Below are positions 24,704 to 64,000 of a DNA stretch of 64,000 nt, in pieces. Each line of letters begins with the position of its first letter. Within the stretch, counting starts at the first letter, position 1. Made by a program: the position numbers and the translations under genes. Under the pieces are notes generated by a model. The model was given only the letters and a program-made list of their open reading frames with translations. It had not been told where the DNA came from and made no database searches. The stretch is from positions 1 through 64,000 of the IMG/VR virus record IMGVR_UViG_3300044640_001495; one strand, given 5' to 3'.

Positions 24704-24907
24704 ATGGTAACAGGAAAAGTAAAATGGTTTAACGACGCCAAAGGTTTTGGATTCATTACTCCGGACGATGGTGGCGCAGACTTATTTGCTCACTTTTCAC
24801 AGATTAATTCGAGTGGCTTCAAGAGCCTACAAGAAGGACAAAGTGTAAGGTTTGAAGTGACTCAGGGTCAAAAAGGCGAGCAGGCTAGTAATATTCAAGC
24901 TGCCTAA
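24704..24907 (+). CDS. cspA: cold-shock protein
   Basis: [17 protein letters not shown] (RNP1) and LFAHFS (RNP2). Confidence 0.95.
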
Positions 24908-24910
24908 AAA

Positions 24911-25270
24911 ATTGTTGTAGAAGTCTTAAAGTAAGGCATTCTGGACGCGGGTTCGACTCCCGCCAGGTCCACCATAAAGGAGATTAGTATGGATAACGAA
25001 TATAGTGCTCTAGTTGGCTTTATTGTTGTTATCGTAGTATTTGCTCTAGTCCTTTTATGATGGGCCTGCCATGGTTTCGACAGGGTGAGATAGGATAAAG
25101 ATCAACACGTGGGGTCACGTAAAATACAAAAAACGTAAATGCAAACGCAGATACATTCGACTTCAGCGCAATGAGCTTCACTGGAAACACTGTTTCCGGC
25201 AAAAGCAAAGTTGCTCTAGCTGCCTAAAAAACAGCGGTCCGAGGTAGTTATACCTTGTCATCCAAAATAG
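24911..25270 (+). ncRNA. ssrA: circularly permuted (two-piece) tmRNA
   Basis: Acceptor piece ...GGACGCGGGTTCGACTCCCGCCAGGTCCACCA ends at 24974. The coding piece starts GGGCCTG at 25062 and pairs with CAGGTCC, including G3-U70. Tag ORF 25141-25227 encodes ANADTFDFSAMSFTGNTVSGKSKVALAA*. Outer boundaries are approximate. Confidence 0.9.
24989..25060 (+). CDS. 23-aa hydrophobic peptide encoded in the tmRNA intervening segment
   Basis: AAGGAG RBS directly after CCA; MDNEYSALVGFIVVIVVFALVLL*; stop ends 1 nt before the tmRNA 5' end. Confidence 0.55.
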   Translation: MDNEYSALVGFIVVIVVFALVLL

Positions 25271-25271
25271 C

Positions 25272-25298
25272 AGAACCCGCTTCGGCGGGTTTCTTTTT
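25272..25298 (+). terminator. intrinsic terminator after tmRNA
   Basis: agaacccgc-TTCG-gcgggtttcttttt. Confidence 0.88.
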
Positions 25299-25328
25299 GG
25301 CAATATTTCCAAATTATCGTCTCGAAGT

Positions 25329-34182: not shown

Positions 34183-34467
34183 ATGGACAGTCAAACCAAA
34201 GAAGTAATGGACATTCTCCAAGAAGAATGTGCTGAAGTAATTCAAGCGGTAAGTAAAATCAGCCGCTTCGGACTAGACAATTTTAAACCAGGAAAACCTA
34301 AAACCAATAGGCAACATCTGGAAGAAGAGCTAGGCGATATGATAACCATGATTGATATCTTGCACAACATGGATATTGTAAGCTGGACAAATATCGACCG
34401 TGCAGCTGAAGCTAAACGTGAAAAACTAAAAAAATGGTCAAATATTCAGAATTTAGAGAATATTTGA
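34183..34467 (+). CDS. MazG-like NTP pyrophosphohydrolase
   Basis: LQEECAEVIQA...LEEELGD motif. Confidence 0.8.
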   Translation: MDSQTKEVMDILQEECAEVIQAVSKISRFGLDNFKPGKPKTNRQHLEEELGDMITMIDILHNMDIVSWTNIDRAAEAKREKLKKWSNIQNLENI

Positions 34468-34555
34468 TATAAATAAAATCGTAAGCTGCACCAAAGCGGG
34501 CGGTTTATAGAGCATAGTGCTCACAATCTAGATCTTACTTTAAAAGGAGATAATT

Positions 34556-36457
34556 ATGTCTAAGATCATCGGTATCGATTTAGGTACCACAAACTCATGT
34601 GTAGCTGTTATTGAAAACGGCATCCCCAAAGTAATTGAAAATGCAGAAGGTGCTAGAACAACACCTTCAATCGTTGCCTACGGCAAAGATGAAATTCTCG
34701 TAGGTGCTTCAGCAAAACGTCAATCAGTTACTAACCCCAAAAATACAATCTATGCTTCAAAGCGTTTGATTGGACGCAAGTTTAAAGAGGAAGCTGTTCA
34801 AAAGGACATCAACCTTATGCCCTACGAAATCATGGAAGCCAAGAATGGCGATGCATGGGTTCGTGCTAATGGTCAAGAGTTGGCGCCTCCACAAATCTCA
34901 GCAGAAGTTTTGCGTAAGATGAAAAAGACAGCGGAGGATTATCTAGGTCATGAAGTTACTCAAGCAGTTATCACAGTTCCTGCGTACTTTAACGACAGCC
35001 AAAGACAAGCTACTAAAGACGCTGGACAAATCGCAGGCCTGGAGGTACTCCGTATTATTAACGAGCCTACTGCGGCAGCTCTTGCTTATGGCGTTGATAA
35101 AGCTGATAAAAGAGATAGGAAAATTGCTGTTTACGATCTTGGTGGCGGTACATTCGATGTTTCGATCATCGAAATAGCCAACGTAGATGGAGACAAGCAG
35201 ATCGAAGTATTGAGCACAAACGGCGATACATTCCTTGGCGGTGAAGACTTTGACCAACGTATTATGGATTACTTGGTTGAAGAATTCCGCAAGGATCAAG
35301 GTGTTGATCTAACCAAAGATGTACTTGCTCTACAGCGTTTAAAAGAATCTGCTGAGAAGGCAAAAATTGAATTGTCTAGCTCTGCAAGCACAAGTGTTAA
35401 TTTGCCATACATCACAGCAGACGCAAGTGGCCCTAAGCACATGAATATCACTATTAGCCGTAGCAAGTTAGAACAGCTTGTTGACGAGTTAATCACTCGC
35501 TCAATTGAGCCATGTAAAGTTGCCATGAAAGATGCAGGTGTCACAGCCGCTGACATCGATGAAGTTATTCTTGTTGGTGGTATGACACGTATGCCAAAGG
35601 TACAAGAAGCCGTTGAAAAATTATTTGGCAAGGCACCACGTAAGGATGTTAATCCAGACGAAGCTGTTGCCGCAGGTGCCGCAGTACAAGGTGCTGTTCT
35701 CGGTGGCGATCGTACTGATGTGTTGTTGCTAGATGTGACTCCACTGAGTTTGGGTATTGAAACAATGGGCGGTGTGTTTGCAAAGGTTATTCAAAAGAAC
35801 ACAACCATTCCGACTAAGGGACAGCAGACATTCTCAACAGCAGAAGACAATCAACCTGCGGTGACTATCAAGGTATTCCAAGGTGAGCGTGATCTAGTAC
35901 AATACAACAAATTGCTAGGTGAATTCAATCTTGAAGGTATTCAACCGCAACGTCGTGGACAGCCGCAAATCGAAGTTACATTTGATATTGATGCTAACGG
36001 TATCATGAATATCTCGGCCAAGGACAAGAGCACAGGCAAAGAAAACAAGATCACTATTAAATCAGATAGCGGTCTAAGCAAAGAAGAAATTGAACGCATG
36101 GTACGTGAAGCTGAAGAAAATGCAGAGAGTGATCAAAAAGCTCGAACATTAATTGATGCTCGCAACCAAGCTGAAGCAACTGTACATGAAGTTAAAAAAG
36201 ATCTTGAAGAATTTAAAGATGAATTAACTGATACAGAAAAGACAGAAATCGAGACAGCAGTTAAATCAGTCGAAGACGCTATGAAAGAAGATGACGCTGA
36301 TAAAATTAAAGCTGAACTCGAAAAAGTTTTTCCGGCAATGAAAACATTGTTGGAGAAAAAGCAGGCCAAGGAACAGGCAGCTCAGGCGCCTCAACCAGAA
36401 GCCAAAGCAGATGACAATGTGGTAGACGCTACGTTTACAGAAACTAAGTCTAGCTAA
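34556..36457 (+). CDS. dnaK: Hsp70 chaperone DnaK
   Basis: [26 protein letters not shown] and VTFDIDANG motifs. Confidence 0.98.
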
Positions 36458-40790: not shown

Positions 40791-42026
40791 ATGAAACAAA
40801 CACTATTATCCCTGGCCGTTGTAGCAGTATTGAGTGGGTGCGCATCAAGTTCGGCTATCAAAGAAAAAATAACTGGAAACCAGTTTGACGAACCGAAAGT
40901 CGAGTCTAGTAAATTTCTAAAGAAAGACTCTAATAAATTACAACCACCAGAAGGCGGACCGTTAACAGTGGCAGTGTATGGATTTAGAGATCTAACAGGG
41001 CAACGTAAAAGCCAGCCACTGATTGCGTCATTAAGTTCAGCTGTTACACAAGGTGCTGAAAACTATCTAATCAAGGCCCTACAGGATGTAGGTGATCAAC
41101 GCTGGTTCACAGTACTAGAACGTGTTGGCCTAGAGAACTTGATCAAAGAACGTCAAATGATTCGTCAAATGCGTGAGCAATACCAAGGCCGTGATGCCAA
41201 GATGTTGCCCCCAATGATGTTTGCCGGGATCATCATGGAAGGTGGCATTGTTGGCTACGATAGCAATACACTAACAGGCGGTAGTGGAGTAAGACTGTTT
41301 GGTATTGGGGCAAGCACACAATACCAATCAGACACTGTGACAGTTACCTTAAGAACAGTGAGCGTGTCTACAGGCGAAATTTTAACAACTGTGACAGTAA
41401 CTAAAACAGTGTTAAGTTATATGGACAAAGTGACATTATTGCGATTTGTTGGAGATGGCACAACTTTAGGTGCAAATGCAAATGCATTAGAGGGTGAGAT
41501 CGGCGGCAGCATAAATGAAAGTATCAACAAGGCAATCGACGTAGCTGTACAGGCAGCAGTGATTCAAACTATTAATGAAGGTGCTCGTAAAGGACACTGG
41601 GCATTTAAAAGCAATAAAGTAAGTTCTCCGGTTGCCGTTATTCCGGCGATACCTGCACCAGTAGTAATACCTGCACCAGTAGTAATACCTGCACCAGTAG
41701 TAATATCAGTACCAGTAGTAGAGGAGAAGAAAGATGTCGTGGTTCAATCACAAGCCAAACCCGAAACCAAAACCGAAGCCGTATCCAGTGCCCCCGCAGA
41801 AATAAAGAAAGAAGTTGTACCGGTTGAAAAACTTTCAGGTGAGATGATTTTAAAGGAAGCTTCTTACATTTATAAAGAGCCCGACCTAACAAGTCAAAAA
41901 ACTTGGCAGTTTAAGAAAGGTGCTTTAGTTACAATTATAGGACAAGAGGGTGATTGGGTAGCAGTCAGTGACTCACAAAAACGAAAAGGATTTGTTAATA
42001 AGGATGTACTGGTTAACAAACCTTAA
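40791..42026 (+). CDS. csgG: curli secretion channel CsgG-like lipoprotein with C-terminal Pro/Val linker and SH3-like domain
   Basis: LSG-C lipobox; VAVYGFRDLTGQRK, SSAVTQGA, LERVGLENLIKERQMIR, EGGIVGYD and VTVTLRTVSV.TGEI. Confidence 0.9.
   Translation: MKQTLLSLAVVAVLSGCASSSAIKEKITGNQFDEPKVESSKFLKKDSNKLQPPEGGPLTVAVYGFRDLTGQRKSQPLIASLSSAVTQGAENYLIKALQDVGDQRWFTVLERVGLENLIKERQMIRQMREQYQGRDAKMLPPMMFAGIIMEGGIVGYDSNTLTGGSGVRLFGIGASTQYQSDTVTVTLRTVSVSTGEILTTVTVTKTVLSYMDKVTLLRFVGDGTTLGANANALEGEIGGSINESINKAIDVAVQAAVIQTINEGARKGHWAFKSNKVSSPVAVIPAIPAPVVIPAPVVIPAPVVISVPVVEEKKDVVVQSQAKPETKTEAVSSAPAEIKKEVVPVEKLSGEMILKEASYIYKEPDLTSQKTWQFKKGALVTIIGQEGDWVAVSDSQKRKGFVNKDVLVNKP
41649..41720 (+). repeat. 18-bp coding tandem repeat (IPAPVV x3 plus one degenerate unit)
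   Basis: atacctgcaccagtagta x3, then atatcagtaccagtagta. Confidence 0.9.
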
Positions 42027-45802: not shown

Positions 45803-47845
45803 ATGCTGAAAAAAATCCTAACTAGTCCTTGGACTGCCCTATTAACATTGGCACTTATTGTAAGTATAAGAATCGCCGATCCTGTCTTTGTAGAAAGTGT
45901 AAGACTACGCTACTTTGACACACTGATTACTAATAAAACTCCAACTGCCAATAACATCTATACGGTAAACATAGATGAAGCAGCATTGGACAAATATGGC
46001 CAGTGGCCTTTACCAAGGGCAGAGTATGCAAAAATTATTAAAGATCTTTATGATCGTGGTGCTGGCCTTGTTGTGCTCAATGTTATCATGGCTGAGCCTG
46101 ATCGCACTGGTGGCGATGCTGTTCTCGCAACGGCCCTAAAACAATATCCAGTTGTAATGGGCAGCGTACCATCACAAAAAACTAAGAACTCTCCTCGCAA
46201 TCCAGGTAGTGCTGTACTAGGTCCAGAGTGGCAGGATCAAATTGTACAATACCCGGGACTTATTGCCAATGTACCTCAGTTAGAAAATGCAGCAGCAGGC
46301 ATTGGTATCGTTAGTACACTGCCAGAAGTAGACGGTGTTAATCGACGACTGCCCCTAGTTGTATCCGTTGATGGTAAATTATATCCCAGTATGTCTATGG
46401 AAGCACTTAGAGTCGCAGCTGGTGATTCAACCTTCCAAGTCAAGCTCAATGAAAATGGTGTTGAGAAAATGCGCATACCCAAGTTTGGTCCTATTACAAC
46501 AGATGCGTTAGGTCGTGTATGGATCGATTGGAGTCAAGAAAACCAACAGGCGAGTCTTTTGGACTTGCCCAAAAACTTTAATGGTGCTATAGTTATAGTA
46601 GGTCCAACAGCCGCAGGCATTGCTAATCCTTTGCCTACAGCTAAAGGTGCAGTGTGGCCGCAGGATGTACAAGCGGCAGCAATGGCAACTATGATCAACG
46701 GAGTGGTAATTCAACGTCCCGACTATGCCGACGGAGTTGAAATCCTAGCATTACTAGTATTCGGCATATTGTTAATTTTCTTATCGAGGTGGACTTATGT
46801 TGGAATTGGTTCTGCTGTGGTTATTGTTGGTGCCGTCGTTCCTGGTACTATGTACGCTTTCAGTAATTGGCTCATCCTATCAGATGCGACTGCAATCACG
46901 TTTGGGCTTGTTATCGTTGCTCTTCATACTTATGGCGTTAAATTTGTAAGCGAGTTCTTACAGAAGCAGGCCATAAAGAAACAGTTTGCGGGTTATTGCT
47001 CTAAAGAAGTTGTAGAGCTACTACAAAAAGATCCAGACTTAATCAAGCGTGGTGTACGCAAAGATGTATCAGTTATGTTCAGTGACCTGCGTGGCTTTAC
47101 TCCTATTGGTGAACACTATGGTGATGATGTAGGCGGACTAGGCAAGTATATGAACGGCTACATGGATGCTATCAGTCGTCCTATCATGAACAACAACGGC
47201 ATGATATTAAAGTATGTAGGTGATGCGAGTATGCACATACATGGTGCTCCTATCGAAGACACCAATCATGCTAGAACTATTGTTGCTGTTGGCCTAGAGA
47301 TGCTGGATGCTGTTGACGAATACACAAAACTGATGGAAGCACAAGGATTACCACCTGCCGCAATGGGTTGGGGTTGCAATACTGGTATTGGCTTTATTGG
47401 CGAGATGGGATCAACTGACAGACACGGTTATGACATCTTAGGTGATATGGTGTCAACCGCGGCACGACTAGAAGCACGTTGTAAGGCCTATGGTGTACTA
47501 TGTATTATTGGTGCTGAAACATACAATCGTACCAAAGACGACTTCTTTTATCTAATGATAGATAACTTACAGCCTAAAGGAAAAACTGTGGCAGACTTGA
47601 TCTATACAGTATTACGTACTAAGGGTGCAGACTACACTAGAGATAAGATAGCACACGAAGTGATGCATGACTTGTACCGACAGAAAAAGTTTGACGAAGC
47701 TGCCGCTATGTGTGCAAAGCTAAAGGGCAACTTTGGTGGACAAATGGACAAGTACTACAAAATCTGGATCGAGCGTTGCGACTTTATGAAACTGCAAGAT
47801 CTAGGCGACAACTGGAACGGCGAGTTTGTTGCTCACGAGAAGTAA
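45803..47845 (+). CDS. CHASE2 sensor plus class III adenylate/guanylate cyclase
   Basis: VNIDEAALDKYGQWP.PR and EVDGVNRRLPL CHASE2 motifs; three TM helices; VMFSDLRGFT, LKYVGD and GDMVSTAARLE. Confidence 0.92.
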   Translation: MLKKILTSPWTALLTLALIVSIRIADPVFVESVRLRYFDTLITNKTPTANNIYTVNIDEAALDKYGQWPLPRAEYAKIIKDLYDRGAGLVVLNVIMAEPDRTGGDAVLATALKQYPVVMGSVPSQKTKNSPRNPGSAVLGPEWQDQIVQYPGLIANVPQLENAAAGIGIVSTLPEVDGVNRRLPLVVSVDGKLYPSMSMEALRVAAGDSTFQVKLNENGVEKMRIPKFGPITTDALGRVWIDWSQENQQASLLDLPKNFNGAIVIVGPTAAGIANPLPTAKGAVWPQDVQAAAMATMINGVVIQRPDYADGVEILALLVFGILLIFLSRWTYVGIGSAVVIVGAVVPGTMYAFSNWLILSDATAITFGLVIVALHTYGVKFVSEFLQKQAIKKQFAGYCSKEVVELLQKDPDLIKRGVRKDVSVMFSDLRGFTPIGEHYGDDVGGLGKYMNGYMDAISRPIMNNNGMILKYVGDASMHIHGAPIEDTNHARTIVAVGLEMLDAVDEYTKLMEAQGLPPAAMGWGCNTGIGFIGEMGSTDRHGYDILGDMVSTAARLEARCKAYGVLCIIGAETYNRTKDDFFYLMIDNLQPKGKTVADLIYTVLRTKGADYTRDKIAHEVMHDLYRQKKFDEAAAMCAKLKGNFGGQMDKYYKIWIERCDFMKLQDLGDNWNGEFVAHEK

Positions 47846-58124: not shown

Positions 58125-58213
58125 GGACGAGTGCGCTGAATTGGTTGAAGGCAACGGACTGTAAATCCGCCACATAAGAAACATTGTAGGTTCGACTCCT
58201 ACCTCGTCCACCA
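58125..58213 (+). tRNA. tRNA-Tyr(GTA)
   Basis: Acceptor ggacgag/ctcgtcc, loop CT-GTA-AA, long variable arm, CCA. Confidence 0.9.
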
Positions 58214-58222
58214 AACGAATGG

Positions 58223-58251
58223 TTGACTTTTTTTTGGATTGGTGTTATACT
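58223..58251 (+). promoter_or_regulatory. sigma70-type promoter
   Basis: TTGACT-N17-TATACT. Confidence 0.75.
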
Positions 58252-58281
58252 ATTAATACTGTGAACTTAAAAGGAAATCAA

Positions 58282-58476
58282 ATGCAATCGTATCGTGTTT
58301 ATGTTGAAGTGGGTTCGTATGCAGGTGAAGGTACCAGCGGTGCTTTTCAAACTGAGAGCCTTCGACAATTTGAAACTGTAGTAAATGCCCAGACATCCGG
58401 AGATGCTGTGCGTATAGCAGAAGCCCAATATGGTGGCCAAGAACGGTGCCGTGTCACGTTCCGCGGCGTTGCTTAA
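58282..58476 (+). CDS. small hypothetical protein within the tRNA array
   Basis: AAGGA RBS; own promoter; 64 aa. Confidence 0.6.
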   Translation: MQSYRVYVEVGSYAGEGTSGAFQTESLRQFETVVNAQTSGDAVRIAEAQYGGQERCRVTFRGVA

Positions 58477-58484
58477 CAATTTTA

Positions 58485-58559
58485 GGTCTGTTCGTATAGA
58501 GGTTATTACTGCGGATTGTCTATCCGCTTACGGGGGTTCGATTCCCCCACAGACCGCCA
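58485..58559 (+). tRNA. tRNA-Asp(GTC)
   Basis: gcgga-TT GTC TA-tccgc; T-loop TTCGATT; CCA. Confidence 0.92.
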
Positions 58560-58566
58560 AGTTTAT

Positions 58567-58643
58567 TCCTCGGTAGCACAGTTGGTAGTTGCGCGGCACT
58601 GTTAATGCCGATGTCGGAAGTTCGAGCCTTCCCCGGGGAGCCA
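58567..58643 (+). tRNA. tRNA-Asn(GTT)
   Basis: cggca-CT GTT AA-tgccg; CCA. Confidence 0.92.
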
Positions 58644-58648
58644 ATAAT

Positions 58649-58724
58649 GTATCCTTAGCTCAATTGGCAGAGCGCTGGTCTCCAAAACCAGAGGTTCGCG
58701 GTTCGAGGCCGTGAGGGTACGCCA
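58649..58724 (+). tRNA. tRNA-Trp(CCA)
   Basis: ctggt-CT CCA AA-accag; CCA. Confidence 0.92.
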
Positions 58725-58732
58725 AGTTTTAT

Positions 58733-58807
58733 GGACCGTTCGTCTATCGGTTAGGACACTAGGTTTTCATCCTGGTAAGAGGGGTTCGACTCCCCTACGG
58801 TCTTCCA
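58733..58807 (+). tRNA. tRNA-Glu(TTC)
   Basis: ctagg-TT TTC AT-cctgg; CCA. Confidence 0.92.
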
Positions 58808-58814
58808 AATTTAT

Positions 58815-58892
58815 GTGGCGGTGGCAGAGAGGCCCATTGCAACGGATTGCAAATCCGTAAAATCGTGAGTTCAAATCTCACCCGCCACTCCA
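58815..58892 (+). tRNA. tRNA-Cys(GCA)
   Basis: acgga-TT GCA AA-tccgt; U73; CCA. Confidence 0.9.
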
Positions 58893-58942
58893 AACATGGC
58901 TCCACTCGTTCGACATAGTCGATGCTGTGGAGTTTTTCTTTT

Positions 58943-59023
58943 GCCCCGGTAGACAAATTGGCAAAGTCGTCTCTCTCAAAAAGAGAAATTTAAATGCGGG
59001 TTCAACTCCCGCCCGGGGTACCA
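58943..59023 (+). tRNA. tRNA-Leu(CAA)
   Basis: tctct-CT CAA AA-agaga; small variable arm; CCA. Confidence 0.88.
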
Positions 59024-59028
59024 ATCAT

Positions 59029-59118
59029 GGAAGTATGGCTGAGCATGGCTTAAGGCAGCAGTCTTGAAAACTGAAGGCTCGAAAGGGTCCGTGGGTTCGA
59101 ATCCTACTACTTCCGCCA
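59029..59118 (+). tRNA. tRNA-Ser(TGA)
   Basis: cagt-CT TGA AA-actg; long variable arm; G73; CCA. Confidence 0.9.
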
Positions 59119-59240
59119 ACTATGGACGAATCATTTGAGCAGTGTTAGATGCACACGGGTTACCTTTCCTAACCGCCAAGTGGCGTACCCCTGCCGAATG
59201 ACCTGGGCGTGGCAGTGATAATGATTCGTCCGCCTAATAC

Positions 59241-59315
59241 AGCCTATTAGCTCAGTGGTAGAGCACCGTCTTGATAAGGCGGGGGTCCTTGGATCGTTCC
59301 CAAGATAGGCTACCA
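59241..59315 (+). tRNA. tRNA-Ile(GAT) with non-canonical T-loop ATCGTTC
   Basis: ccgtc-TT GAT AA-ggcgg; acceptor agcctat/ataggct; CCA. Confidence 0.88.
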
Positions 59316-59337
59316 ATTTTTTAAAAGGAGATCTGTC

Positions 59338-59382
59338 ATGACTAGTGACAAGAGTGATAAGATAACGGGGGTGAAACTTTAA
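59338..59382 (+). CDS. 14-aa mini-ORF overlapping the 5' end of tRNA-Lys
   Basis: AAGGAG RBS; MTSDKSDKITGVKL*. Confidence 0.35.
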   Translation: MTSDKSDKITGVKL

Positions 59383-59440
59383 GGTGAAGTAACTGGCTTT
59401 TAACCAGTAAAACTCGGATCGTTCCCGAGCACCCCTACCA
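59367..59440 (+). tRNA. tRNA-Lys(TTT) with non-canonical T-loop ATCGTTC
   Basis: actgg-CT TTT AA-ccagt; CCA. Confidence 0.85.
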
Positions 59441-59521
59441 TATAAAAACACATTAGGCCTGGTCATAGACCATCGCGGGTATAGTGCCTTCCGTGCCGCG
59501 GACTTGAGTGTGTTTTTATAT

Positions 59522-59597
59522 GGTAATATAGCATAGTGGCTAATGCAGTTGCTTCATACGCAGCCTATCGTTGGTTCGAGTCCAACTATTACCACCA
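59522..59597 (+). tRNA. tRNA with CAT anticodon (elongator Met or lysidine-Ile2)
   Basis: gttgc-TT CAT AC-gcagc; paired G1-C72, so not initiator-like; CCA. Confidence 0.88.
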
Positions 59598-59603
59598 AGT
59601 TGT

Positions 59604-59677
59604 TGGGGGTTAGTTAAATGGTATAACCGCGGATTTTGATTCCGCTATTAAAGGTTCGATTCCTTTACCCTCTGCCA
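59604..59677 (+). tRNA. tRNA-Gln(TTG)
   Basis: gcgga-TT TTG AT-tccgc; U1-U72 mismatch; CCA. Confidence 0.88.
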
Positions 59678-59685
59678 AAAAATAA

Positions 59686-59760
59686 CGGTCCTTAGTTCAA
59701 TGGATAGAATGCTTGGCTTCGAACCAAGCGGTGTGGGTTCGATTCCTGCAGGACCGGCCA
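59686..59760 (+). tRNA. tRNA-Arg(TCG)
   Basis: cttgg-CT TCG AA-ccaag; CCA. Confidence 0.9.
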
Positions 59761-59761
59761 A

Positions 59762-60436
59762 CTAGATAATAGTAGATAGTTCAGCAGGAGTTAACTTAGG
59801 TGGCTCTGGAAAAGGACGTGGATCAGAAAACCCAACTGTTGTTGGTCCGTTGTTTACCGTTTCTCTTACTCGAGAGTCATTGGGTTGGCCAACAGATAGA
59901 AACACAATGGGCCATTCATTTTCTGCAAGACCTAAAATCTTGTGAGCTTGGTCTTCGAAAAAGCATGATGTAAAGGCAGTACGATATCCTAGAGATTCTG
60001 CTTGTATCATAGAAAAACTAGCAGCAATCATTGTATCTTTTTCAGAACGTGTTCGAACAGTATATTGTGTTTTAGGATCAGCAGATCTAGAAGATACATT
60101 TATTCCTTGTTCACGTACTGTAGTACCATTAGAAACAAGACCTAGGTCAAAGTTGTCTAAGATAGGAACTCCTATCCATGCTAACAGTAAAGGTGATTGG
60201 GCTGTTAGTAAATGTTTACGAATTGGCATGTTAATGAAACTGTCTAAGAACAGTTTATTTTTTAATTCAAGAGCTTTGTGGCTTTGAGTTAATGCAATAA
60301 CACGCCAAGGATATGCACGTTGCTTACTAGGGGCTGAACAACCAGCTGTTAGTATTGAGTCAATATGCTCTTGAGGTATAGCGTCATTAGTAAATGCTCG
60401 CTGTGTTCGTCGATTTAAAAAGATGTCTAACATCAA
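59762..60436 (-). CDS. nitroreductase-family flavoprotein inserted antisense in the tRNA array
   Basis: NRRTQRAF, I..IL.AG..APS...AYPW, MIQAESLGYRTAF and FLSVG. Confidence 0.8.
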   Translation of the reverse strand: MMLDIFLNRRTQRAFTNDAIPQEHIDSILTAGCSAPSKQRAYPWRVIALTQSHKALELKNKLFLDSFINMPIRKHLLTAQSPLLLAWIGVPILDNFDLGLVSNGTTVREQGINVSSRSADPKTQYTVRTRSEKDTMIAASFSMIQAESLGYRTAFTSCFFEDQAHKILGLAENEWPIVFLSVGQPNDSRVRETVNNGPTTVGFSDPRPFPEPPKLTPAELSTII

Positions 60437-60447
60437 GTATTTATTTT

Positions 60448-60521
60448 ATCGCTGTAGTGAAAAGATATCACAAGACCCTGCGAAGGTCTAAGTCCACGTT
60501 CAACTCGTGGCAGCGATACCA
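60448..60521 (+). tRNA. tRNA-Arg(GCG)
   Basis: agacc-CT GCG AA-ggtct; acceptor atcgctg/cagcgat; D-loop lacks GG; CCA. Confidence 0.82.
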
Positions 60522-60591
60522 AAATTAGTAAAATTCTATTACGTAAGATCCAAGCAAAGTGCAAGGATTGGCCATAACAAGGAGATATAAA

Positions 60592-60798
60592 ATGAAACCT
60601 ATTACTTTTAAAAATCGTTTAAACAACGAACGAGTAGTCTGTGAAGATTCTCGTCAAACTCAGAATATAGATGGCGTTGAGTATCTCTTGGTTCATCGCC
60701 CTGACAATCAACGACAGTTCCTTATGCGTAAGGATGTGTTAGAAAAAGTTAATGGTGTTGGTAGTGTAGTGGCTGCACGGCTGTCTGTGAAACAGTAA
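60592..60798 (+). CDS. small hypothetical protein whose C-terminus is read through tRNA-His
   Basis: AAGGAG RBS; MKPITFKNRLNNERVVCED...; stop lies inside the tRNA. Confidence 0.6.
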   Translation: MKPITFKNRLNNERVVCEDSRQTQNIDGVEYLLVHRPDNQRQFLMRKDVLEKVNGVGSVVAARLSVKQ

Positions 60799-60827
60799 GA
60801 GAGAGTTCGATTCTCCCCTTCACCCCA
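60754..60827 (+). tRNA. tRNA-His(GTG), atypical (two U-U pairs in acceptor stem)
   Basis: gctgt-CT GTG AA-acagt; G-1/C73; CCA. Confidence 0.72.
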
Positions 60828-60829
60828 AT

Positions 60830-60905
60830 GCCGCTTTAGCTGATGTGGTCATAGCACCGGTTTGAAGAACCGAGGAACTAGGTTCGATCCCTAGAGGCGG
60901 CACCA
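60830..60905 (+). tRNA. tRNA-Phe(GAA)
   Basis: cggt-TT GAA GA-accg; CCA. Confidence 0.88.
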
Positions 60906-60911
60906 AGATAT

Positions 60912-60995
60912 GTGAGCGTGGTGGAATGGTATACACAGCAGACTTAAAATCTGCCGCCTTCGGGATTGAGGGTTCAAGTCCCTCCGCTCATACCA
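60912..60995 (+). tRNA. tRNA-Leu(TAA)
   Basis: gcaga-CT TAA AA-tctgc; variable arm; CCA. Confidence 0.92.
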
Positions 60996-61002
60996 AATAA
61001 AT

Positions 61003-61094
61003 GCCAGCGAGACTTGGTAGTCAGAGAGGTTTTATAAACCTTTTAGCGCCAGATTAGCGTTCTTGAGAGGGTTCGATTCCCTCCGCTGGTACCA
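61003..61094 (+). tRNA. tRNA-Ile(TAT) with long variable arm
   Basis: gaggt-TT TAT AA-acctt; variable arm agcgc-cagatta-gcgtt; acceptor gccagcg/cgctggt; A73; CCA. Confidence 0.8.
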
Positions 61095-61124
61095 AATTAT
61101 TTTATAAGTTTTTTCATAAAGTTG

Positions 61125-61153
61125 TTGACACACAGGTGATTAGACTATATAAT
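61125..61153 (+). promoter_or_regulatory. sigma70-type promoter inside the tRNA array
   Basis: TTGACA-N17-TATAAT. Confidence 0.85.
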
Positions 61154-61175
61154 GTATATTATTAGTTAGAAATTT

Positions 61176-61259
61176 GCGCAAGTGGTGGAATGGTATACAC
61201 GCTGGTCTTAGAAGCCAGTGCCGAAAGGATTGAGAGTTCGAGTCTCTCCTTGCGCACCA
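61176..61259 (+). tRNA. tRNA-Leu(TAG)
   Basis: ctggt-CT TAG AA-gccag; variable arm; CCA. Confidence 0.92.
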
Positions 61260-61266
61260 TAGTTTA

Positions 61267-61342
61267 GGGTTCTTAGCTCAGTTGGTAGAGCGTCTGCCTT
61301 ACACGCAGAATGTCGTCAGTTCGACCCTGGCAGAACCCACCA
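61267..61342 (+). tRNA. tRNA-Val(TAC)
   Basis: tctgc-CT TAC AC-gcaga; CCA. Confidence 0.93.
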
Positions 61343-61350
61343 AGCAACAC

Positions 61351-61438
61351 GGAGCATTGGCCGACCGGTTAAGGCAACAGATTGCTAATCTGTCATTCAG
61401 TAATGGGTGAGTAGGTTCGATTCCTACATGCTCCGCCA
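61351..61438 (+). tRNA. tRNA-Ser(GCT)
   Basis: acaga-TT GCT AA-tctgt; long variable arm; CCA. Confidence 0.92.
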
Positions 61439-61441
61439 TAA

Positions 61442-61641
61442 CGTTCCGAGTGTCTTCGGATAGTGTGACCCACACGATGAGAAGTAGTGTGACAACTACG
61501 GGTGGTAGTCTTTAAACCCAAAGGCCGCTAGCAATGCGAGAACGGTCCCTGTCGGGAAGCGGGTGGAAGGTACGAGTGAGGGGTATGATAGCGTCATATC
61601 TTTCTGTACTATAATTACCGCCGGGGGATGCAGAGCAACCA
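61442..61641 (+). ncRNA. candidate ~200-nt structured RNA of unknown family in the tRNA array
   Basis: At least seven short stems, GC-richer than flanks, no ORF of 60 aa or more, ends in ACCA. Confidence 0.55.
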
Positions 61642-61662
61642 GATTTTAATAAAGGAAATACA

Positions 61663-61875
61663 ATGAAACCAGGTCCAAATTATAGAATGAGTGCTTTGAC
61701 TAAAGCAAGTCTAGCAATGAGTAGAGTTCTAGATCCGCACAAACGAGGTGAATGGAAACGTGCTATGATTGATGCTGAACTATGTGCTGCCGTGGTGCCA
61801 AAACGTGAACCACGCAAACAGGGAGGTGGTAATTTTACCACTCATGCATCCGGAACAGTATCCAGTGGAGGCTAA
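61663..61875 (+). CDS. small basic hypothetical protein
   Basis: AAGGA RBS; 70 aa. Confidence 0.6.
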   Translation: MKPGPNYRMSALTKASLAMSRVLDPHKRGEWKRAMIDAELCAAVVPKREPRKQGGGNFTTHASGTVSSGG

Positions 61876-61876
61876 C

Positions 61877-62026
61877 ATGCAAGTTCGAGTTAAAGAAAAT
61901 GCAGATCAGGTTGGTAAGTGTGGTTGCGGTCGTTCGCCTACTGGTAAGTGCATCGGTTGGCACGGACTAACCGAACAAGCATTTAAAGAAAAACTTCAAG
62001 AGTATAAACTCAACGAAGGTAAGTAA
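61877..62026 (+). CDS. CDGSH-like Fe-S / zinc-finger small protein
   Basis: GGAGG RBS; CGCGRSPTGKCIGWHG. Confidence 0.65.
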   Translation: MQVRVKENADQVGKCGCGRSPTGKCIGWHGLTEQAFKEKLQEYKLNEGK

Positions 62027-62032
62027 AATATT

Positions 62033-62107
62033 GGGCTGTTGGTATAGATGGGAACACAGTAGCTTTGCAAGCTTCAATCCCCGGTTCGATCCCGGGACGG
62101 TCCACCA
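62033..62107 (+). tRNA. tRNA-Ala(TGC)
   Basis: G3-U70 in gggctgt/acggtcc; TT TGC AA loop; CCA. Confidence 0.88.
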
Positions 62108-62124
62108 AGTTTTAAGTAAGTATT

Positions 62125-62198
62125 GCCCCTTTAGTATAATGGTATTACACCTGTTTTGTAATCAGGTTACGGCAGTTCGATTCTGTCAAGGGGCACCA
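62125..62198 (+). tRNA. tRNA-Thr(TGT)
   Basis: cctg(t)-TT TGT AA-(t)cagg; CCA. Confidence 0.9.
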
Positions 62199-62212
62199 TT
62201 TTTTAGGTACAT

Positions 62213-62830
62213 ATGAAATTTGCATATTTTAATCCAACTGTGATGGCTGTGGCCGATGTGCCGGCGGATGTATTCACCAATTTGAAAAGTCTAGTAGATA
62301 CTGCACATACCAAGACAGAACTCAATGATGAGGGTAATCCTGCTATTAGCATACGTGGCGGACAGCAGATTCAACTCTTGCCAAATCAATTCAATCTAGA
62401 CACAGGGCATATCAAACGCTATGTAGAAGCGCAGTGCCAGGAATACATGGATGCGCAGATCAAACAAAGCGGTCGCAACGATCTGTCAGCATTTCAACCC
62501 ATGTTGGTTTCAGCATGGACTATACGTCAGACTGCAGGCGACTATCAGGCCATGCACAATCATGAAGCACATATCAGCGGCAACATCTACATTGATGTTC
62601 CTGATCTTGATCTCACAGACAACATATCGGATGCTGTGATTGAGTTTAGATTGCCGGTGGTAAGAAACCCTGCACATTTTGTTTTTGTAGATCAATGGCG
62701 GTTTACCCCAAATCCCATGAAGATGATCATATTTCCCAGCTATATTCCACACACTGTGTATCCGTGGAAAGGCAAGGGCCACAGAACAATTTTGGCTTGG
62801 GATGTGAAATTAGTGGCAAAAAAGACTTGA
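62213..62830 (+). CDS. 2OG-Fe(II) oxygenase (TIGR02466-like)
   Basis: SAWT...GDYQAMHNH..ISGNIY, IFPSYIPHTVYP and RTILAWD. Confidence 0.82.
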   Translation: MKFAYFNPTVMAVADVPADVFTNLKSLVDTAHTKTELNDEGNPAISIRGGQQIQLLPNQFNLDTGHIKRYVEAQCQEYMDAQIKQSGRNDLSAFQPMLVSAWTIRQTAGDYQAMHNHEAHISGNIYIDVPDLDLTDNISDAVIEFRLPVVRNPAHFVFVDQWRFTPNPMKMIIFPSYIPHTVYPWKGKGHRTILAWDVKLVAKKT

Positions 62831-62855
62831 CATTTAGTCTAAAGAGTGCTATAAT
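62827..62855 (+). promoter_or_regulatory. sigma70-type promoter
   Basis: TTGACA-N17-TATAAT. Confidence 0.88.
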
Positions 62856-62862
62856 AGTTTTG

Positions 62863-63120
62863 TTGTGTAGCAATACATGACCGGTAAAGCGAAGGGTAGA
62901 TGAGAATAGACACAAAGGTGTGAGCTTCATGCTTACTCCAAACTTACAACCATCTGAACAATGGCCGTGTTTATGTGATCCGATCCCTAATAGAATGTCA
63001 TTTGTTAATCGGAAATATATGGACCTCTGTGTATTGTATTTTGCACATTGTCAACGAAGACTACAACTCTTCATTGTATATTGTCCGGTCTATTACTTGA
63101 CCTTTCGTTGACCCGTTATT
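62863..63120 (+). ncRNA. candidate structured RNA / long 5' leader upstream of the rpoZ-like gene
   Basis: Long-range pairings cgaagggt/acctttcg, aatagac/gtctatt and acacaaaggt/acctctgtgt, plus local hairpins. Confidence 0.45.
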
Positions 63121-63138
63121 TTTAACCTAAAGGAATAT

Positions 63139-63387
63139 ATGAACAAACAACTTTCATCAGAAGACGCAGTGGCAGCATACGGCGATAGATTTGAAATGGT
63201 ATTGGCTGCAAGTCAACGAGCTCGAGAGTTGAAAAACGGTCATGCTCCTAGAGTTGATAAAGGTAGTCATGGATTTATTGTTACTGCTCTAAACGAAATC
63301 GAACAGGGCAAGTATACTAGACTTGATTTTTTAAAAACTGTTAAAACAAAGAAGAAAGGACAACGTGATGAACATTTCCCTACGTAA
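63139..63387 (+). CDS. rpoZ: RNA polymerase omega subunit-like protein
   Basis: EDAV...GDRFEMVLAASQRARELKNG..P.V......IVTALNEIEQG. Confidence 0.8.
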   Translation: MNKQLSSEDAVAAYGDRFEMVLAASQRARELKNGHAPRVDKGSHGFIVTALNEIEQGKYTRLDFLKTVKTKKKGQRDEHFPT

Positions 63388-63940
63388 GGCAAACGCAGTT
63401 CAGAATTCGATCAATGAAGCAATCAAGGGTATTAAGATTGATACCAGCATTGAGATCAACGAGTTCCAGAACGCACAAGATGAGATTCAAAAGGCCAATA
63501 ACCTTTTGATCACAAATGATGGTCGCCGACAAAAGCTGTTGTTGGCCTTGTACAACATTCGCGGACTGGTTGGTACAGCCAACGCAAATTGCGGAATTGA
63601 CCTGTCATTGGCCAAGGCTGCGTTCATTGACAAGCGTGTCACACAGTTGACTGAAATAGCCACATTGAATCCAGTGAGTGACTTGGCTGTGGTCAACGGC
63701 AAGTTGGACAAGATCCGCAGCCGCAAAGAAGAAAGCCGTGCAAGTTTGTACGGCCGTGACGACACGGTATCTACCAGTGTTGTTGGACGAGATCAAATTG
63801 ATCAAGCCAAGGCAGAGATCCAAAATCTCAAGAAGCAGAAACAAAAACTCAATGATGAAGTTCTTGAGTTAAATATCAAAACTGAAATTCCACTCAGTGA
63901 TGATGTTGTAGCAACACTGCAAGCTGAAGGCTTGATCTAA
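63368..63940 (+). CDS. coiled-coil hypothetical protein
   Basis: 190 aa helical ORF with AAAGGA RBS. Confidence 0.65.
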   Translation: MNISLRKANAVQNSINEAIKGIKIDTSIEINEFQNAQDEIQKANNLLITNDGRRQKLLLALYNIRGLVGTANANCGIDLSLAKAAFIDKRVTQLTEIATLNPVSDLAVVNGKLDKIRSRKEESRASLYGRDDTVSTSVVGRDQIDQAKAEIQNLKKQKQKLNDEVLELNIKTEIPLSDDVVATLQAEGLI

Positions 63941-64000
63941 CAGACCCCGGGCGCCCTTGCCCGTTATACAAAGGGGGTGGGGCAGTCACCATAAAGAGTG

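What the first reader, a model, noticed from the sequence alone, without database searches (positions are those of the whole stretch)
63139..63387. Phage-encoded RNA polymerase omega (RpoZ)-like subunit
Seen: the conserved omega core RF-x-MVL-AA-x-RAR-x-L...TAL-x-EI-x-x-G, expressed from a sigma70 promoter. Established: omega aids beta-prime folding and forms ppGpp site 1 in proteobacterial RNAP. The N-terminal MARVT motif that contributes to ppGpp binding is replaced here by MNKQLS. Inference: swapping in phage omega could make host RNAP less sensitive to the stringent response, in line with the MazG-like gene.
Basis: partly seen in the sequence, partly recalled or inferred. Interest (0 to 1): 0.6.

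Follow-up and report, generated by a model that had tools for sequence, protein, structure and literature searches.

The report
Jumbo-phage copy of RNA polymerase omega
A 353-kb lake-water phage that has no RNA polymerase of its own carries a working-looking copy of omega, the smallest subunit of the bacterial enzyme, probably to fit the host polymerase for phage transcription; the gene sits behind a very abundant, previously uncatalogued structured RNA.

Summary
The ORF at 63139-63387 (+, 82 aa) is real and belongs to the omega/Rpb6 family: Pfam 45.6 bits against a cut-off of 26, and TIGR00690 rpoZ 30.1 against 23.6. It lies in a 98%-complete 353-kb virus record that has no beta, beta' or sigma70-region-2 gene but 35 perfect sigma70 consensus promoters.

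At least 72 viral contigs carry relatives. These separate from all sampled bacterial omegas, of which the best is 51% identical. The gene is under purifying selection (dN/dS 0.06-0.23). A complex model places it on the canonical omega site of E. coli beta' (score 0.65, best control 0.00).

However, most phage omegas keep MAR, and the loss is derived in this subclade. Blinding the polymerase to ppGpp is therefore at most a secondary, untested elaboration.

The 'promoter' next to the gene lies inside a helix of a conserved structured RNA of about 255 nt (62862-63115). This RNA is transcribed from a perfect promoter at 62827-62855. Rfam does not recognise it, and it is very abundant in lake metatranscriptome assemblies. 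RNA, omega and an overlapping 190-aa gene form a conserved module.

The parts
62827..62855 (+). Perfect sigma70 consensus promoter (TTGACA, 17 nt, TATAAT, with TG extension). It is the likely start of the RNA-omega-partner transcript, at about 62862.
   Evidence: It matches 12 of 12 consensus positions. A consensus-like promoter is conserved 296-331 nt upstream of omega in most relatives, with variable spacer sequence. It is one of 35 perfect sites in the 353-kb genome; from base composition I expect about 0.15 (my arithmetic).
62862..63115 (+). Conserved structured RNA of about 255 nt. A long closing helix joins its 5' and 3' ends and encloses three covarying hairpins. It also holds an array of six (N4)YUG heptads (63026-63083), interrupted by a variable hairpin (63054-63073).
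   Evidence: At the DNA level it is more conserved than the omega coding sequence. RNAalifold predicts 51 pairs, 31 of them with compensatory changes. The consensus energy is -46.9, against -3.8 (sd 2.2) for column-shuffled alignments, z = -19. There is no Rfam match, even at E up to 10, and it is single-copy in the genome. Contigs confined to about 62880-63120 have very high word depth in lake metatranscriptome assemblies.
63097..63125 (+). The -35 hexamer is part of the RNA's closing helix, and the -10 is degenerate in this genome.
   Evidence: Several relatives carry TTGACC-17-TATAAT at -40 to -43 (L143, L145, L149, L152, L158, L161, L164, L167), so a second promoter may work there. In the window only 3 of 6 positions of the -10 match. 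The pairing of this stretch is shown.
63139..63387 (+). Omega (RpoZ/Rpb6-family) gene, 82 aa, with ribosome-binding site AAAGGAA at 63129-63135.
   Evidence: It is the only PF01192 match in the genome. dN/dS is 0.06-0.23. The complex model with E. coli beta' scores 0.65, with a best control of 0.00.
63368..63940 (+). Conserved 190-aa helical protein of unknown function (the 'partner'). It overlaps the last 20 nt of omega, and its ribosome-binding site AAAGGA lies inside omega's 3' end.
   Evidence: The overlap or abutment with omega (20, 17 or 4 nt, or a gap of 1 nt) is conserved across relatives. There are 1871 clusters at E <= 0.001. The model has pLDDT 90. There is no Pfam or PHROG family and no informative fold match.

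Best explanation
The gene encodes a functional omega subunit that an uncultured lake-water jumbo phage makes early, from a consensus sigma70 promoter. The phage is a distant relative of Sinorhizobium phage Phosso, Agrobacterium phage Atu_ph07 and the Rak2-like phages.

The phage has no beta, beta' or sigma70-type gene of its own, so it depends on the host's sigma70 holoenzyme. I infer that the phage omega binds the canonical omega site on host beta', namely region D, region G and the C-terminal tail. It would do so either by joining newly assembled core or by replacing the loosely held host omega through mass action.

The effect would be a host polymerase that stays fully loaded with omega: assembled, processive, and biased towards the primary sigma factor that the phage's consensus promoters need. 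In this particular subclade the N-terminal MAR motif has been replaced by MNKQ. That probably alters, and may abolish, ppGpp site 1 on the phage-fitted polymerase. I treat this as a derived addition and not as the reason the gene exists.

Shown here: family membership, phage origin, purifying selection, conservation of the interface residues, an in-silico canonical docking, and a consensus promoter. Inferred: actual binding, exchange with host omega, and every physiological effect.
For: Family membership and phage origin:
- Family scores are above the curated cut-offs, and E. coli omega is the nearest solved chain.
- The record is a virus: tail fibres, a T4-type DNA polymerase and a virion protein. 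It is 353 kb and 98% complete.
- Its DNA polymerase is 50%, 46% and 43% identical to those of Phosso, Atu_ph07 and 121Q.

Dependence on the host enzyme:
- No PF00562, PF04997 or PF04542 match was found in the genome.
- The genome holds 35 perfect TTGACA-17-TATAAT sites, one of them ahead of this operon.

A real, maintained gene:
- There are 76 protein clusters and 72 viral loci with relatives.
- dN/dS is 0.06-0.23.
- The invariant or nearly invariant residues (R17, F18, V21, L22, A24, A28, R29, A50, L51) are those at the modelled interface.

Complex model:
- The score is 0.65 (runs 0.65, 0.77 and 0.64) against a best control of 0.00. That mark was reached by 58 of 80 solved complexes and 2 of 110 mismatched pairs.
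- The runs agree in at least 83% of their contacts, and the partner's pLDDT is at least 67.
- The interface covers beta' 363-364, 417-418, 474-488, 613-619, 905, 910-912 and 1360-1371.

Transcripts:
- Contigs from RNA libraries cover omega, for example X21 record 21, spanning 63077-63750.

Established knowledge:
- Omega promotes assembly and primary-sigma association (PMC3985657, PMC9638019).
- Omega promotes processivity and resistance to termination (PMC13192885).
Against: - No experiment has been done. The complex pass may reflect the model's memory of solved E. coli RNAP structures, and E. coli is not the host.
- The host is unknown. The closest bacterial omegas are only 40-51% identical.
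- Omega is dispensable in most bacteria in the laboratory, so the benefit of an extra copy is not obvious.
- Related cultured jumbo phages (Phosso, Atu_ph07, 121Q, CcrColossus) manage without one.
- The RNA-library contigs could come from carried-over DNA, and they show neither strand nor level.
- I tested for sigma only with the Sigma70_r2 model. A T4 gp55-type late sigma was not searched for.
Confidence: 0.55

Rival explanations
1. Phage omega exists to replace host omega so that RNAP loses ppGpp site 1 and phage transcription escapes the stringent response. It would work together with MazG.
For: - MAR is replaced in the window protein, and the modelled N-terminus lies beside the beta' residues around site 1.
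- Phage omegas lose MAR far more often than the nearest bacterial ones: 18 of 45 distinct phage sequences against 2 of 79 bacterial. The quick tree needs about five changes.
- MazG is present.
- The stringent response can restrict phages, and phages do counter it (PMC13483052).
- MAR is the motif tied to ppGpp binding (PMC6416229, PMC9638019).
Against: - Most phage omegas, including the sister lineages, keep MAR or MAK. The ancestral phage omega would therefore have preserved site 1.
- In E. coli, site 2 with DksA carries most of the initiation effect (cited in PMC13192885), so loss of site 1 alone gives limited relief.
- Lys3 may still supply a charge.
- MazG lies 29 kb away, next to dnaK, and is not linked to omega.
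Confidence: 0.2
2. Adaptor model. Phage omega is a phage-specific handle on RNAP through which the co-transcribed 190-aa protein, the abundant structured RNA, or both, act on the polymerase. This would be analogous to GafA acting through omega, or to 6S RNA acting on the holoenzyme.
For: - Omega stays near the RNA-partner pair in three different arrangements: RNA-omega-partner; omega upstream of RNA-partner; and RNA-partner followed by omega.
- Translational coupling by overlap is conserved.
- There is a precedent for a virus-like element being regulated through omega (PMC9638019).
- The RNA is highly abundant in RNA libraries.
Against: - The RNA-partner pair occurs without omega between them in many contigs.
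- Partner homologues exist in phages that have no omega at all, namely CcrColossus and CcrPW.
- Fold-level look-alikes occur even in giant viruses.
- The partner has no recognisable nucleic-acid-binding or RNAP-binding fold.
- No omega-partner complex model was run, because the single job went to omega and beta'.
Confidence: 0.15
3. Decoy or inhibitor. Phage omega binds beta' non-productively and shuts down host transcription or RNAP assembly.
For: Many phages make small early proteins that inhibit host RNAP (general knowledge). The gene sits behind an early-type promoter.
Against: - The phage has no polymerase of its own and uses consensus sigma70 promoters throughout, so it needs an active host enzyme.
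- The interface residues are conserved as in working omegas.
Confidence: 0.05
4. A passenger gene captured from a host, with no role in infection.
For: Huge phages carry many host-like genes. This one has dnaK, ribonucleotide reductase, csgG, a cyclase and a nitroreductase.
Against: - Purifying selection is strong.
- Its position is conserved, with coupled translation, over relatives down to about 40% identity.
- It separates from all sampled bacterial omegas in the tree (SH-aLRT 91).
- No near-identical bacterial donor was found among representatives of 185,579 species.
Confidence: 0.03

Closest known systems
Bacterial RNA polymerase omega subunit (RpoZ; Pfam PF01192, TIGR00690), e.g. E. coli omega
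   Same: It belongs to the same family by curated thresholds. It is about 40% identical to E. coli omega over residues 5-61. The conserved helices are the same, and the predicted docking on beta' regions D and G and the C-terminal tail is the same.
   Different: - It is encoded by a virus, not in the gmk-rpoZ-spoT context.
- It forms its own clade apart from the sampled bacterial omegas.
- MAR is replaced by MNKQ.
- It carries a family-specific GKYT motif after EIEQ, and a basic tail whose last residues are constrained by the overlapping next gene.
Small phage proteins that reprogram host RNAP (T4 AsiA, MotA, Alc and RpbA; T7 Gp2; Xp10 p7; P23-45 gp39)
   Same: It is a small early phage product expected to bind host RNAP and bias it towards phage transcription. 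This comparison rests on general knowledge and on PMC3950348 and PMC6624301, found.
   Different: Those proteins are unrelated binders or inhibitors. This one is a homologue of a core subunit, and would occupy that subunit's own site.
Multisubunit RNAPs of phiKZ-like jumbo phages (PMC7598289, PMC4666361)
   Same: In both cases a jumbo phage carries homologues of cellular RNAP subunits.
   Different: phiKZ-type enzymes are built from split beta and beta' homologues. This genome has omega only, and no beta or beta' match.
GafA-omega control of the gene transfer agent RcGTA (PMC9638019)
   Same: A virus-like element uses omega as the contact point for its own transcription programme.
   Different: RcGTA uses the host's omega and a DNA-binding activator. 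Here the phage brings its own omega, and no GafA-like protein was identified.
Phage countermeasures to the stringent response (phage MazG; T7 portal Gp8 inhibiting RelA and SpoT, PMC13483052)
   Same: Both concern a possible interference with (p)ppGpp signalling. MazG is present in this genome.
   Different: Those act on the alarmone or on its synthetases. A MAR-less omega would act on the receptor site on RNAP, and this is untested.
6S RNA and other abundant structured non-coding RNAs (for the upstream RNA)
   Same: It is an abundant, discrete, structured RNA encoded next to a transcription gene.
   Different: It matches none of the 4227 Rfam families, even at E up to 10. Its shape is a multi-branch fold with a heptad array, not the rod with a central bubble typical of 6S RNA.

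Membership tests
RNA polymerase omega / Rpb6 (PF01192; TIGR00690 rpoZ) | Sequence scores above the curated family cut-offs | tested here: met
   PF01192 scores 45.6 bits against 26. TIGR00690 scores 30.1 against 23.6. The narrower model NF001579 is not reached (20.3 against 58).
RNA polymerase omega / Rpb6 (PF01192; TIGR00690 rpoZ) | Binds beta' at conserved regions D and G and latches the beta' C-terminal tail | tested here: inconclusive
   The test was in silico only. The complex model with E. coli beta' fragments scores 0.65 against a best control of 0.00, with contacts at beta' 474-488, 905-912 and 1360-1371.
RNA polymerase omega / Rpb6 (PF01192; TIGR00690 rpoZ) | Co-purifies with RNAP core as a stoichiometric subunit | not testable with these tools
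   This needs biochemistry.
Proteobacterial ppGpp-site-1 omega | N-terminal MAR motif (PMC6416229, PMC9638019) | tested here: not met
   The window protein starts MNKQLSS. 77 of the 79 nearest bacterial omegas and 27 of 45 distinct phage omegas have MAR or MAK.
Proteobacterial ppGpp-site-1 omega | Typical gene context gmk-rpoZ-spoT | tested here: not met
   The context here is tRNA array, 2OG-Fe(II) oxygenase, structured RNA, omega, 190-aa gene. The gmk-rpoZ-spoT context appears only in a bacterial contig mislabelled as a phage.
Phage multisubunit RNAP (phiKZ-like) | Phage-encoded beta and beta' homologues | tested here: not met
   There is no PF00562 or PF04997 match at E <= 0.1 in the 98%-complete genome. 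Very divergent homologues could escape these models.
Any Rfam family (for the upstream RNA) | Covariance-model match | tested here: not met
   Nothing over 62862-63115 reaches gathering score. At E up to 10 the only row is a spurious 6.7-bit alpha_tmRNA hit over the promoter.

The most novel reading that the evidence does not exclude
Omega is one part of a three-part, phage-specific module that takes over the host polymerase. The module consists of a very abundant structured RNA of about 255 nt (with six YUG heptads that look like a binding array for a multimeric protein), the phage's own omega, and a highly conserved 190-aa protein. In this reading the RNA and/or the protein act on RNAP through the phage omega, so that only polymerases refitted by the phage are redirected. 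In some lineages they would also be made deaf to ppGpp.
Probability: 0.15. Interest if true: 0.85.

Novelty: new variant of a known kind. Interest (0 to 1): 0.62.

Why it matters
Phages are known to retool host RNA polymerase with unrelated small binders, or to bring whole polymerases. A virus that brings its own copy of a core subunit to slot into the host enzyme would be a different strategy. I found no paper describing it in five full-text searches.

Natural phage omegas with and without the MAR motif offer a ready-made comparison for two open questions: what omega and ppGpp site 1 actually contribute in vivo, and whether starvation signalling limits phage transcription in nutrient-poor lakes.

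The upstream RNA is a separate lead. It is a strongly covarying, uncatalogued RNA that is among the most deeply covered sequences of these phages in lake metatranscriptome assemblies.

Tried and rejected
- Nucleotide search of 62200-64000 against 50,697 phage records found no match.
- A tblastn search of omega against the same records gave 8 hits at 39-40% identity. The three rows with annotation there (Acinetobacter phage MD-2021a, two Salmonella enterica records) are bacterial rpoZ; 'Acinetobacter phage MD-2021a', the one I opened, sits in gmk-rpoZ-spoT. The other four records carry no annotation there and were not opened.
- PHROGs has no family for omega.
- PF01192 is absent from CcrColossus, Phosso, Atu_ph07 and 121Q.
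- CcrColossus gp270, an 81-aa gene near the partner homologue, looked like a candidate omega. It shows no PF01192 match.
- The partner's function stayed open. Foldseek against the PDB gave nothing at E <= 0.001 (best 3kdq, a protein of unknown function). VIA-align gave a best Z of 10.5 to the same chain, within the range common for helical proteins. The atlas gave only viral hypothetical clusters and a distant DUF6847.
- Rfam gave nothing for the RNA, and blastn of the RNA against phage records gave nothing.
- The donor or host could not be named. The best bacterial omegas are scattered over Wigglesworthia, Pelagibacteraceae, Sutterellaceae and Alphaproteobacteria at 40-51% identity.
- The careful tree search did not finish in time, so only the quick tree is reported.
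- I did not type the 347-column structure string into the count of structure pairs. I ran a column-shuffle control in a script instead.
- No covariance model was built, because the model length would exceed the calibration limit.
- The review of omega by Kurkela et al. is not held in the library.

Full report
OBSERVATION

The window holds an 82-codon ORF at 63139-63387 on the + strand, starting MNKQLSS. It matches Pfam RNA_pol_Rpb6 (PF01192) over 50 of 53 profile positions, at 45.6 bits against a gathering score of 26. It matches the NCBIfam equivalog TIGR00690 rpoZ at 30.1 bits against 23.6. A narrower omega model, NF001579, is not reached.

The nearest solved chain by sequence is E. coli omega, at E 2.4e-6 with residues 5-61 aligned to 4-61. 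PHROGs has no family for it.

WHAT CARRIES THE GENE

The window is the first 64 kb of a 353,123-bp IMG/VR virus record rated 98% complete, and this ORF is its only omega-family match. The record is clearly a tailed phage. It has tail-fibre and virion proteins, a T4-type family-B DNA polymerase and a Clp/Lon-type protease.

Its polymerase is 50% identical to that of Sinorhizobium phage Phosso, 46% to Agrobacterium phage Atu_ph07 and about 43% to the Rak2-like Escherichia phage 121Q. The window also carries:
- 23 tRNA genes and a tmRNA;
- ribonucleotide reductase, DnaK, a CsgG-like protein and a CHASE2-cyclase;
- a MazG-domain gene at 34198-34428.

DNA identical or nearly identical to this stretch is found in many lake-water metagenomes.

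DEPENDENCE ON HOST RNAP

The genome gives no match to the beta (PF00562), beta' (PF04997) or Sigma70_r2 (PF04542) models at E <= 0.1. It holds 35 perfect TTGACA-N17-TATAAT sites, where base composition predicts about 0.15 (my arithmetic). Many of them lie in a block at 306-337 kb on the minus strand. The phage therefore transcribes at least its early genes with the host's primary-sigma holoenzyme. I did not search for a T4 gp55-type late sigma.

A PHAGE FAMILY, NOT A RECENT CAPTURE

The word-indexed protein search found 76 clusters of 72-125 aa at 50-98% identity, on contigs up to 266 kb. A scan of IMG/VR found 72 viral loci.

A scan of one genome for each of 185,579 prokaryote species found only ordinary bacterial omegas at 29-51% identity. 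The best were Wigglesworthia at 51%, a Pelagibacteraceae MAG at 49%, and Sutterellaceae and Alphaproteobacteria at about 40%.

In a quick maximum-likelihood tree all 77 bacterial sequences fall on one side of a branch (SH-aLRT 91) and the phage sequences on the other. The tree has few columns and some long branches, so the deep order is unsure.

Pairwise dN/dS is 0.06-0.23, calculated without the codons that overlap the next gene. The cultured relatives CcrColossus, Phosso, Atu_ph07 and 121Q have no PF01192 match. The tblastn hits in the phage collection whose annotation is readable are bacterial rpoZ records: the one I opened lies in gmk-rpoZ-spoT, and four further records carry no annotation there. 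Five literature searches found no description of a phage-encoded omega. JGI's pipeline does label some of these metagenome proteins as omega.

DOES IT FIT RNAP?

I modelled the protein, with its family alignment, against three fragments of E. coli beta' (residues 330-660, 700-945 and 1131-1407). The verdict was 'supports binding':
- The score was 0.65 (runs 0.65, 0.77, 0.64) and the best of three controls was 0.00.
- That mark was reached by 58 of 80 solved complexes and 2 of 110 mismatched pairs.
- The runs agree in at least 83% of contacts, and the partner's pLDDT is at least 67.

The interface is the canonical one. It comprises beta' 474-488 (region D), 905 and 910-912 (region G), and 1360-1371 (the C-terminal tail). 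It also includes 363-364, 417-418 and 613-619, which surround ppGpp site 1. On the omega side the contacts are residues 4-10, 16-32, 44-51 and 65. These include the family's invariant or nearly invariant positions R17, F18, V21, L22, A24, A28, R29, A50 and L51.

Caveats stated by the tool apply. Solved E. coli RNAP structures may be remembered by the model, my own alignment was used, and a pass shows likeness, not binding. E. coli is also not the host.

THE MAR MOTIF

Anchored on the conserved (E/Q)DAV, E. coli Ala2 and Arg3 correspond to Lys3 and Gln4 here, and the chain is one residue longer. The motif that the literature ties to ppGpp binding (PMC6416229, PMC9638019) is therefore gone.

The family as a whole keeps it, however. 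27 of 45 distinct phage omegas start MAR or MAK, against 77 of the 79 nearest bacterial ones that start MAR. The window's subclade (MNKQ, MNNQ, MIHS; support 100) is nested among MAR-bearing phage omegas, and its sister starts MARY. Other lineages changed independently (MTQR and MTSR, which keep the Arg; also MAEG, MNDK and others). The quick tree needs about five changes, though the strongly supported branches alone force only one.

My reading is this. The gene was acquired and maintained with site 1 intact. The N-terminus is the most changeable part of phage omegas, much more so than in bacteria. This is compatible with repeated tuning or loss of ppGpp sensing, but it does not make that the gene's basic purpose. 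The genome has no DksA/TraR or RelA/SpoT homologue.

PROMOTER AND AN UNEXPECTED RNA

The strong promoter is at 62827-62855 (12 of 12 consensus positions, TG extension). Relatives keep a consensus-like promoter 296-331 nt upstream of omega, with unrelated spacer sequence. The stretch between promoter and gene is better conserved than the gene itself.

RNAalifold on 25 sequences predicts 51 pairs, 31 of them with compensatory double changes. The consensus energy is -46.9 kcal/mol, against -3.8 (sd 2.2) for 100 column-shuffled alignments, z = -19. The paired span is 62862-63115.

Features of the fold:
- A long closing helix pairs GAAAGGTAGATGAGGATAGAC near the 5' end with GTCTATTACTTGACCTTTC near the 3' end. 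The TTGACC that looks like a -35 beside omega is therefore inside an RNA helix.
- In about a third of relatives a TATAAT follows it at 17 nt, so a second promoter may exist there. In the window the -10 reads TTTTAA.
- Inside lie three covarying hairpins and an array of six (N4)YUG heptads (63026-63083), split by a hairpin of variable sequence.

The element is single-copy in the genome. It matches no Rfam family, even at E 10, and has no blastn match in 50,697 phage records.

In assemblies of four lake metatranscriptomes, contigs confined to about 62880/62891-63113/63120 have much higher word depths than the contigs over omega:

| Run | Depth over the RNA | Depth over omega |
|---|---|---|
| X21 | 8,860-30,723 | 27 |
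| X20 | 583-832 | 0-8 |
| X22 | 55-64 | 4-11 |

In X20, adapter remnants abut 62891 and 63113. These contigs differ from the window by about 6%, so they come from relatives. Contig depth is a crude measure, and neither strand nor true ends are shown. Even so, the pattern points to a discrete, stable, very abundant RNA.

THE MODULE

Omega's last 20 nt overlap a 190-aa gene (63368-63940), whose ribosome-binding site lies inside omega. The same overlap or abutment (20, 17 or 4 nt, or a gap of 1 nt) recurs in relatives down to about 40% omega identity.

The partner is more conserved than omega, with a mean column identity of 71%, and its family is large at 1871 clusters. Its invariant N-terminus MNISLRK explains the apparent conservation of omega's C-terminal DE(H/Y)FPT through the shared DNA.

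A scan for the RNA's 3' motif found at least 120 viral stretches. In the 81 places that I examined, the partner follows in 75. In many of them it follows directly, with no omega in between. In others an omega-like ORF lies downstream of the partner or upstream of the RNA. The core is therefore RNA plus partner, and omega has joined it in several arrangements.

The partner models confidently (pLDDT 90) as a helical protein. It has no informative match: the best is PDB 3kdq, of unknown function, followed by viral hypothetical proteins and a distant DUF6847. Weak homologues occur in CcrColossus and CcrPW, which lack omega.

MECHANISM AND VERDICT

The most likely explanation (confidence 0.55) is that the phage makes its own omega early to keep the host core enzyme omega-loaded. 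Published work links omega to assembly, to primary-sigma association (PMC3985657, PMC9638019), and to processivity and termination resistance (PMC13192885). This would suit a 353-kb genome that is read from consensus sigma70 promoters in slow-growing lake bacteria.

In this subclade the changed N-terminus may in addition weaken ppGpp site 1. An adaptor role for the RNA or partner I rate at 0.15. A decoy role and a passenger gene are unlikely.

The finding is a new variant of a known kind: a known subunit family in an undescribed viral role and context. 

Noticed in passing
window 62862-63115 (+): A structured RNA of about 255 nt with strong covariation (31 of 51 pairs compensatory; z = -19 against shuffled alignments). 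It matches no Rfam family and carries six (N4)YUG heptads. Contigs confined to it have 10- to 1000-fold higher depth than the neighbouring genes in lake metatranscriptome assemblies. In viral contigs it is followed by the 190-aa gene in 75 of 81 places examined.
   Followed up: partly
window 63368-63940 (+): A highly conserved 190-aa helical protein of unknown function (1871 clusters). Its translation is coupled to omega. Weak homologues occur in Caulobacter phages CcrColossus and CcrPW, and fold look-alikes in Vibrio and Erwinia jumbo phages and two giant viruses.
   Followed up: partly
whole genome G000; e.g. window 6061(-), 22973, 33563, 49849, 57333, 57419, 61125, 62827: The 353-kb genome holds 35 perfect TTGACA-N17-TATAAT promoters, against about 0.15 expected. 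Twenty-one of them lie on the minus strand at 310-337 kb, which looks like an early-gene block.
   Followed up: partly
window 24880-25318 (+): A phage tmRNA that matches both the betaproteobacterial and the permuted tmRNA models. ARAGORN predicts an unusually long tag, ANADTFDFSAMSFTGNTVSGKSKVALAA. This is a possible hint at a betaproteobacterial host.
   Followed up: no
window 58125-62198 (+): An array of 23 tRNA genes. It is interrupted by a nitroreductase gene on the opposite strand (59762-60436) and by a small ORF. The omega genes of several other viral contigs also lie directly after tRNA genes.
   Followed up: no
window 62213-62830 (+): The 2OG-Fe(II) oxygenase gene between tRNA-Thr and the promoter is missing in some relatives. 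RNA-library contigs join 62198 directly to 62880.
   Followed up: no
window 34198-36457 (+): A MazG-domain ORF lies immediately upstream of a full-length DnaK (Hsp70, 633 aa). A CsgG-like gene (40791-42026) and a CHASE2-adenylate/guanylate cyclase (45803-47845) lie further on. These are unusual host-like cargo for a phage.
   Followed up: no
window 63876-64000 (+): Just after the 190-aa gene, one metatranscriptome assembly (X20) shows depth of 550-839. This comes from a 1018-nt contig of a relative that also holds the RNA, so I could not tell whether a second abundant RNA lies here.
   Followed up: no
phage collection record CAKLQH020000003.1 (locus L121): 'Acinetobacter phage MD-2021a' is a bacterial chromosome fragment filed as phage; its rpoZ sits in gmk-rpoZ-spoT with pilus genes alongside. 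In the tblastn table, two records named Salmonella enterica also carry an annotated omega gene; four records named as E. coli, Salmonella or Campylobacter phages match at the same 40% identity but have no annotation there and were not opened.
   Followed up: yes
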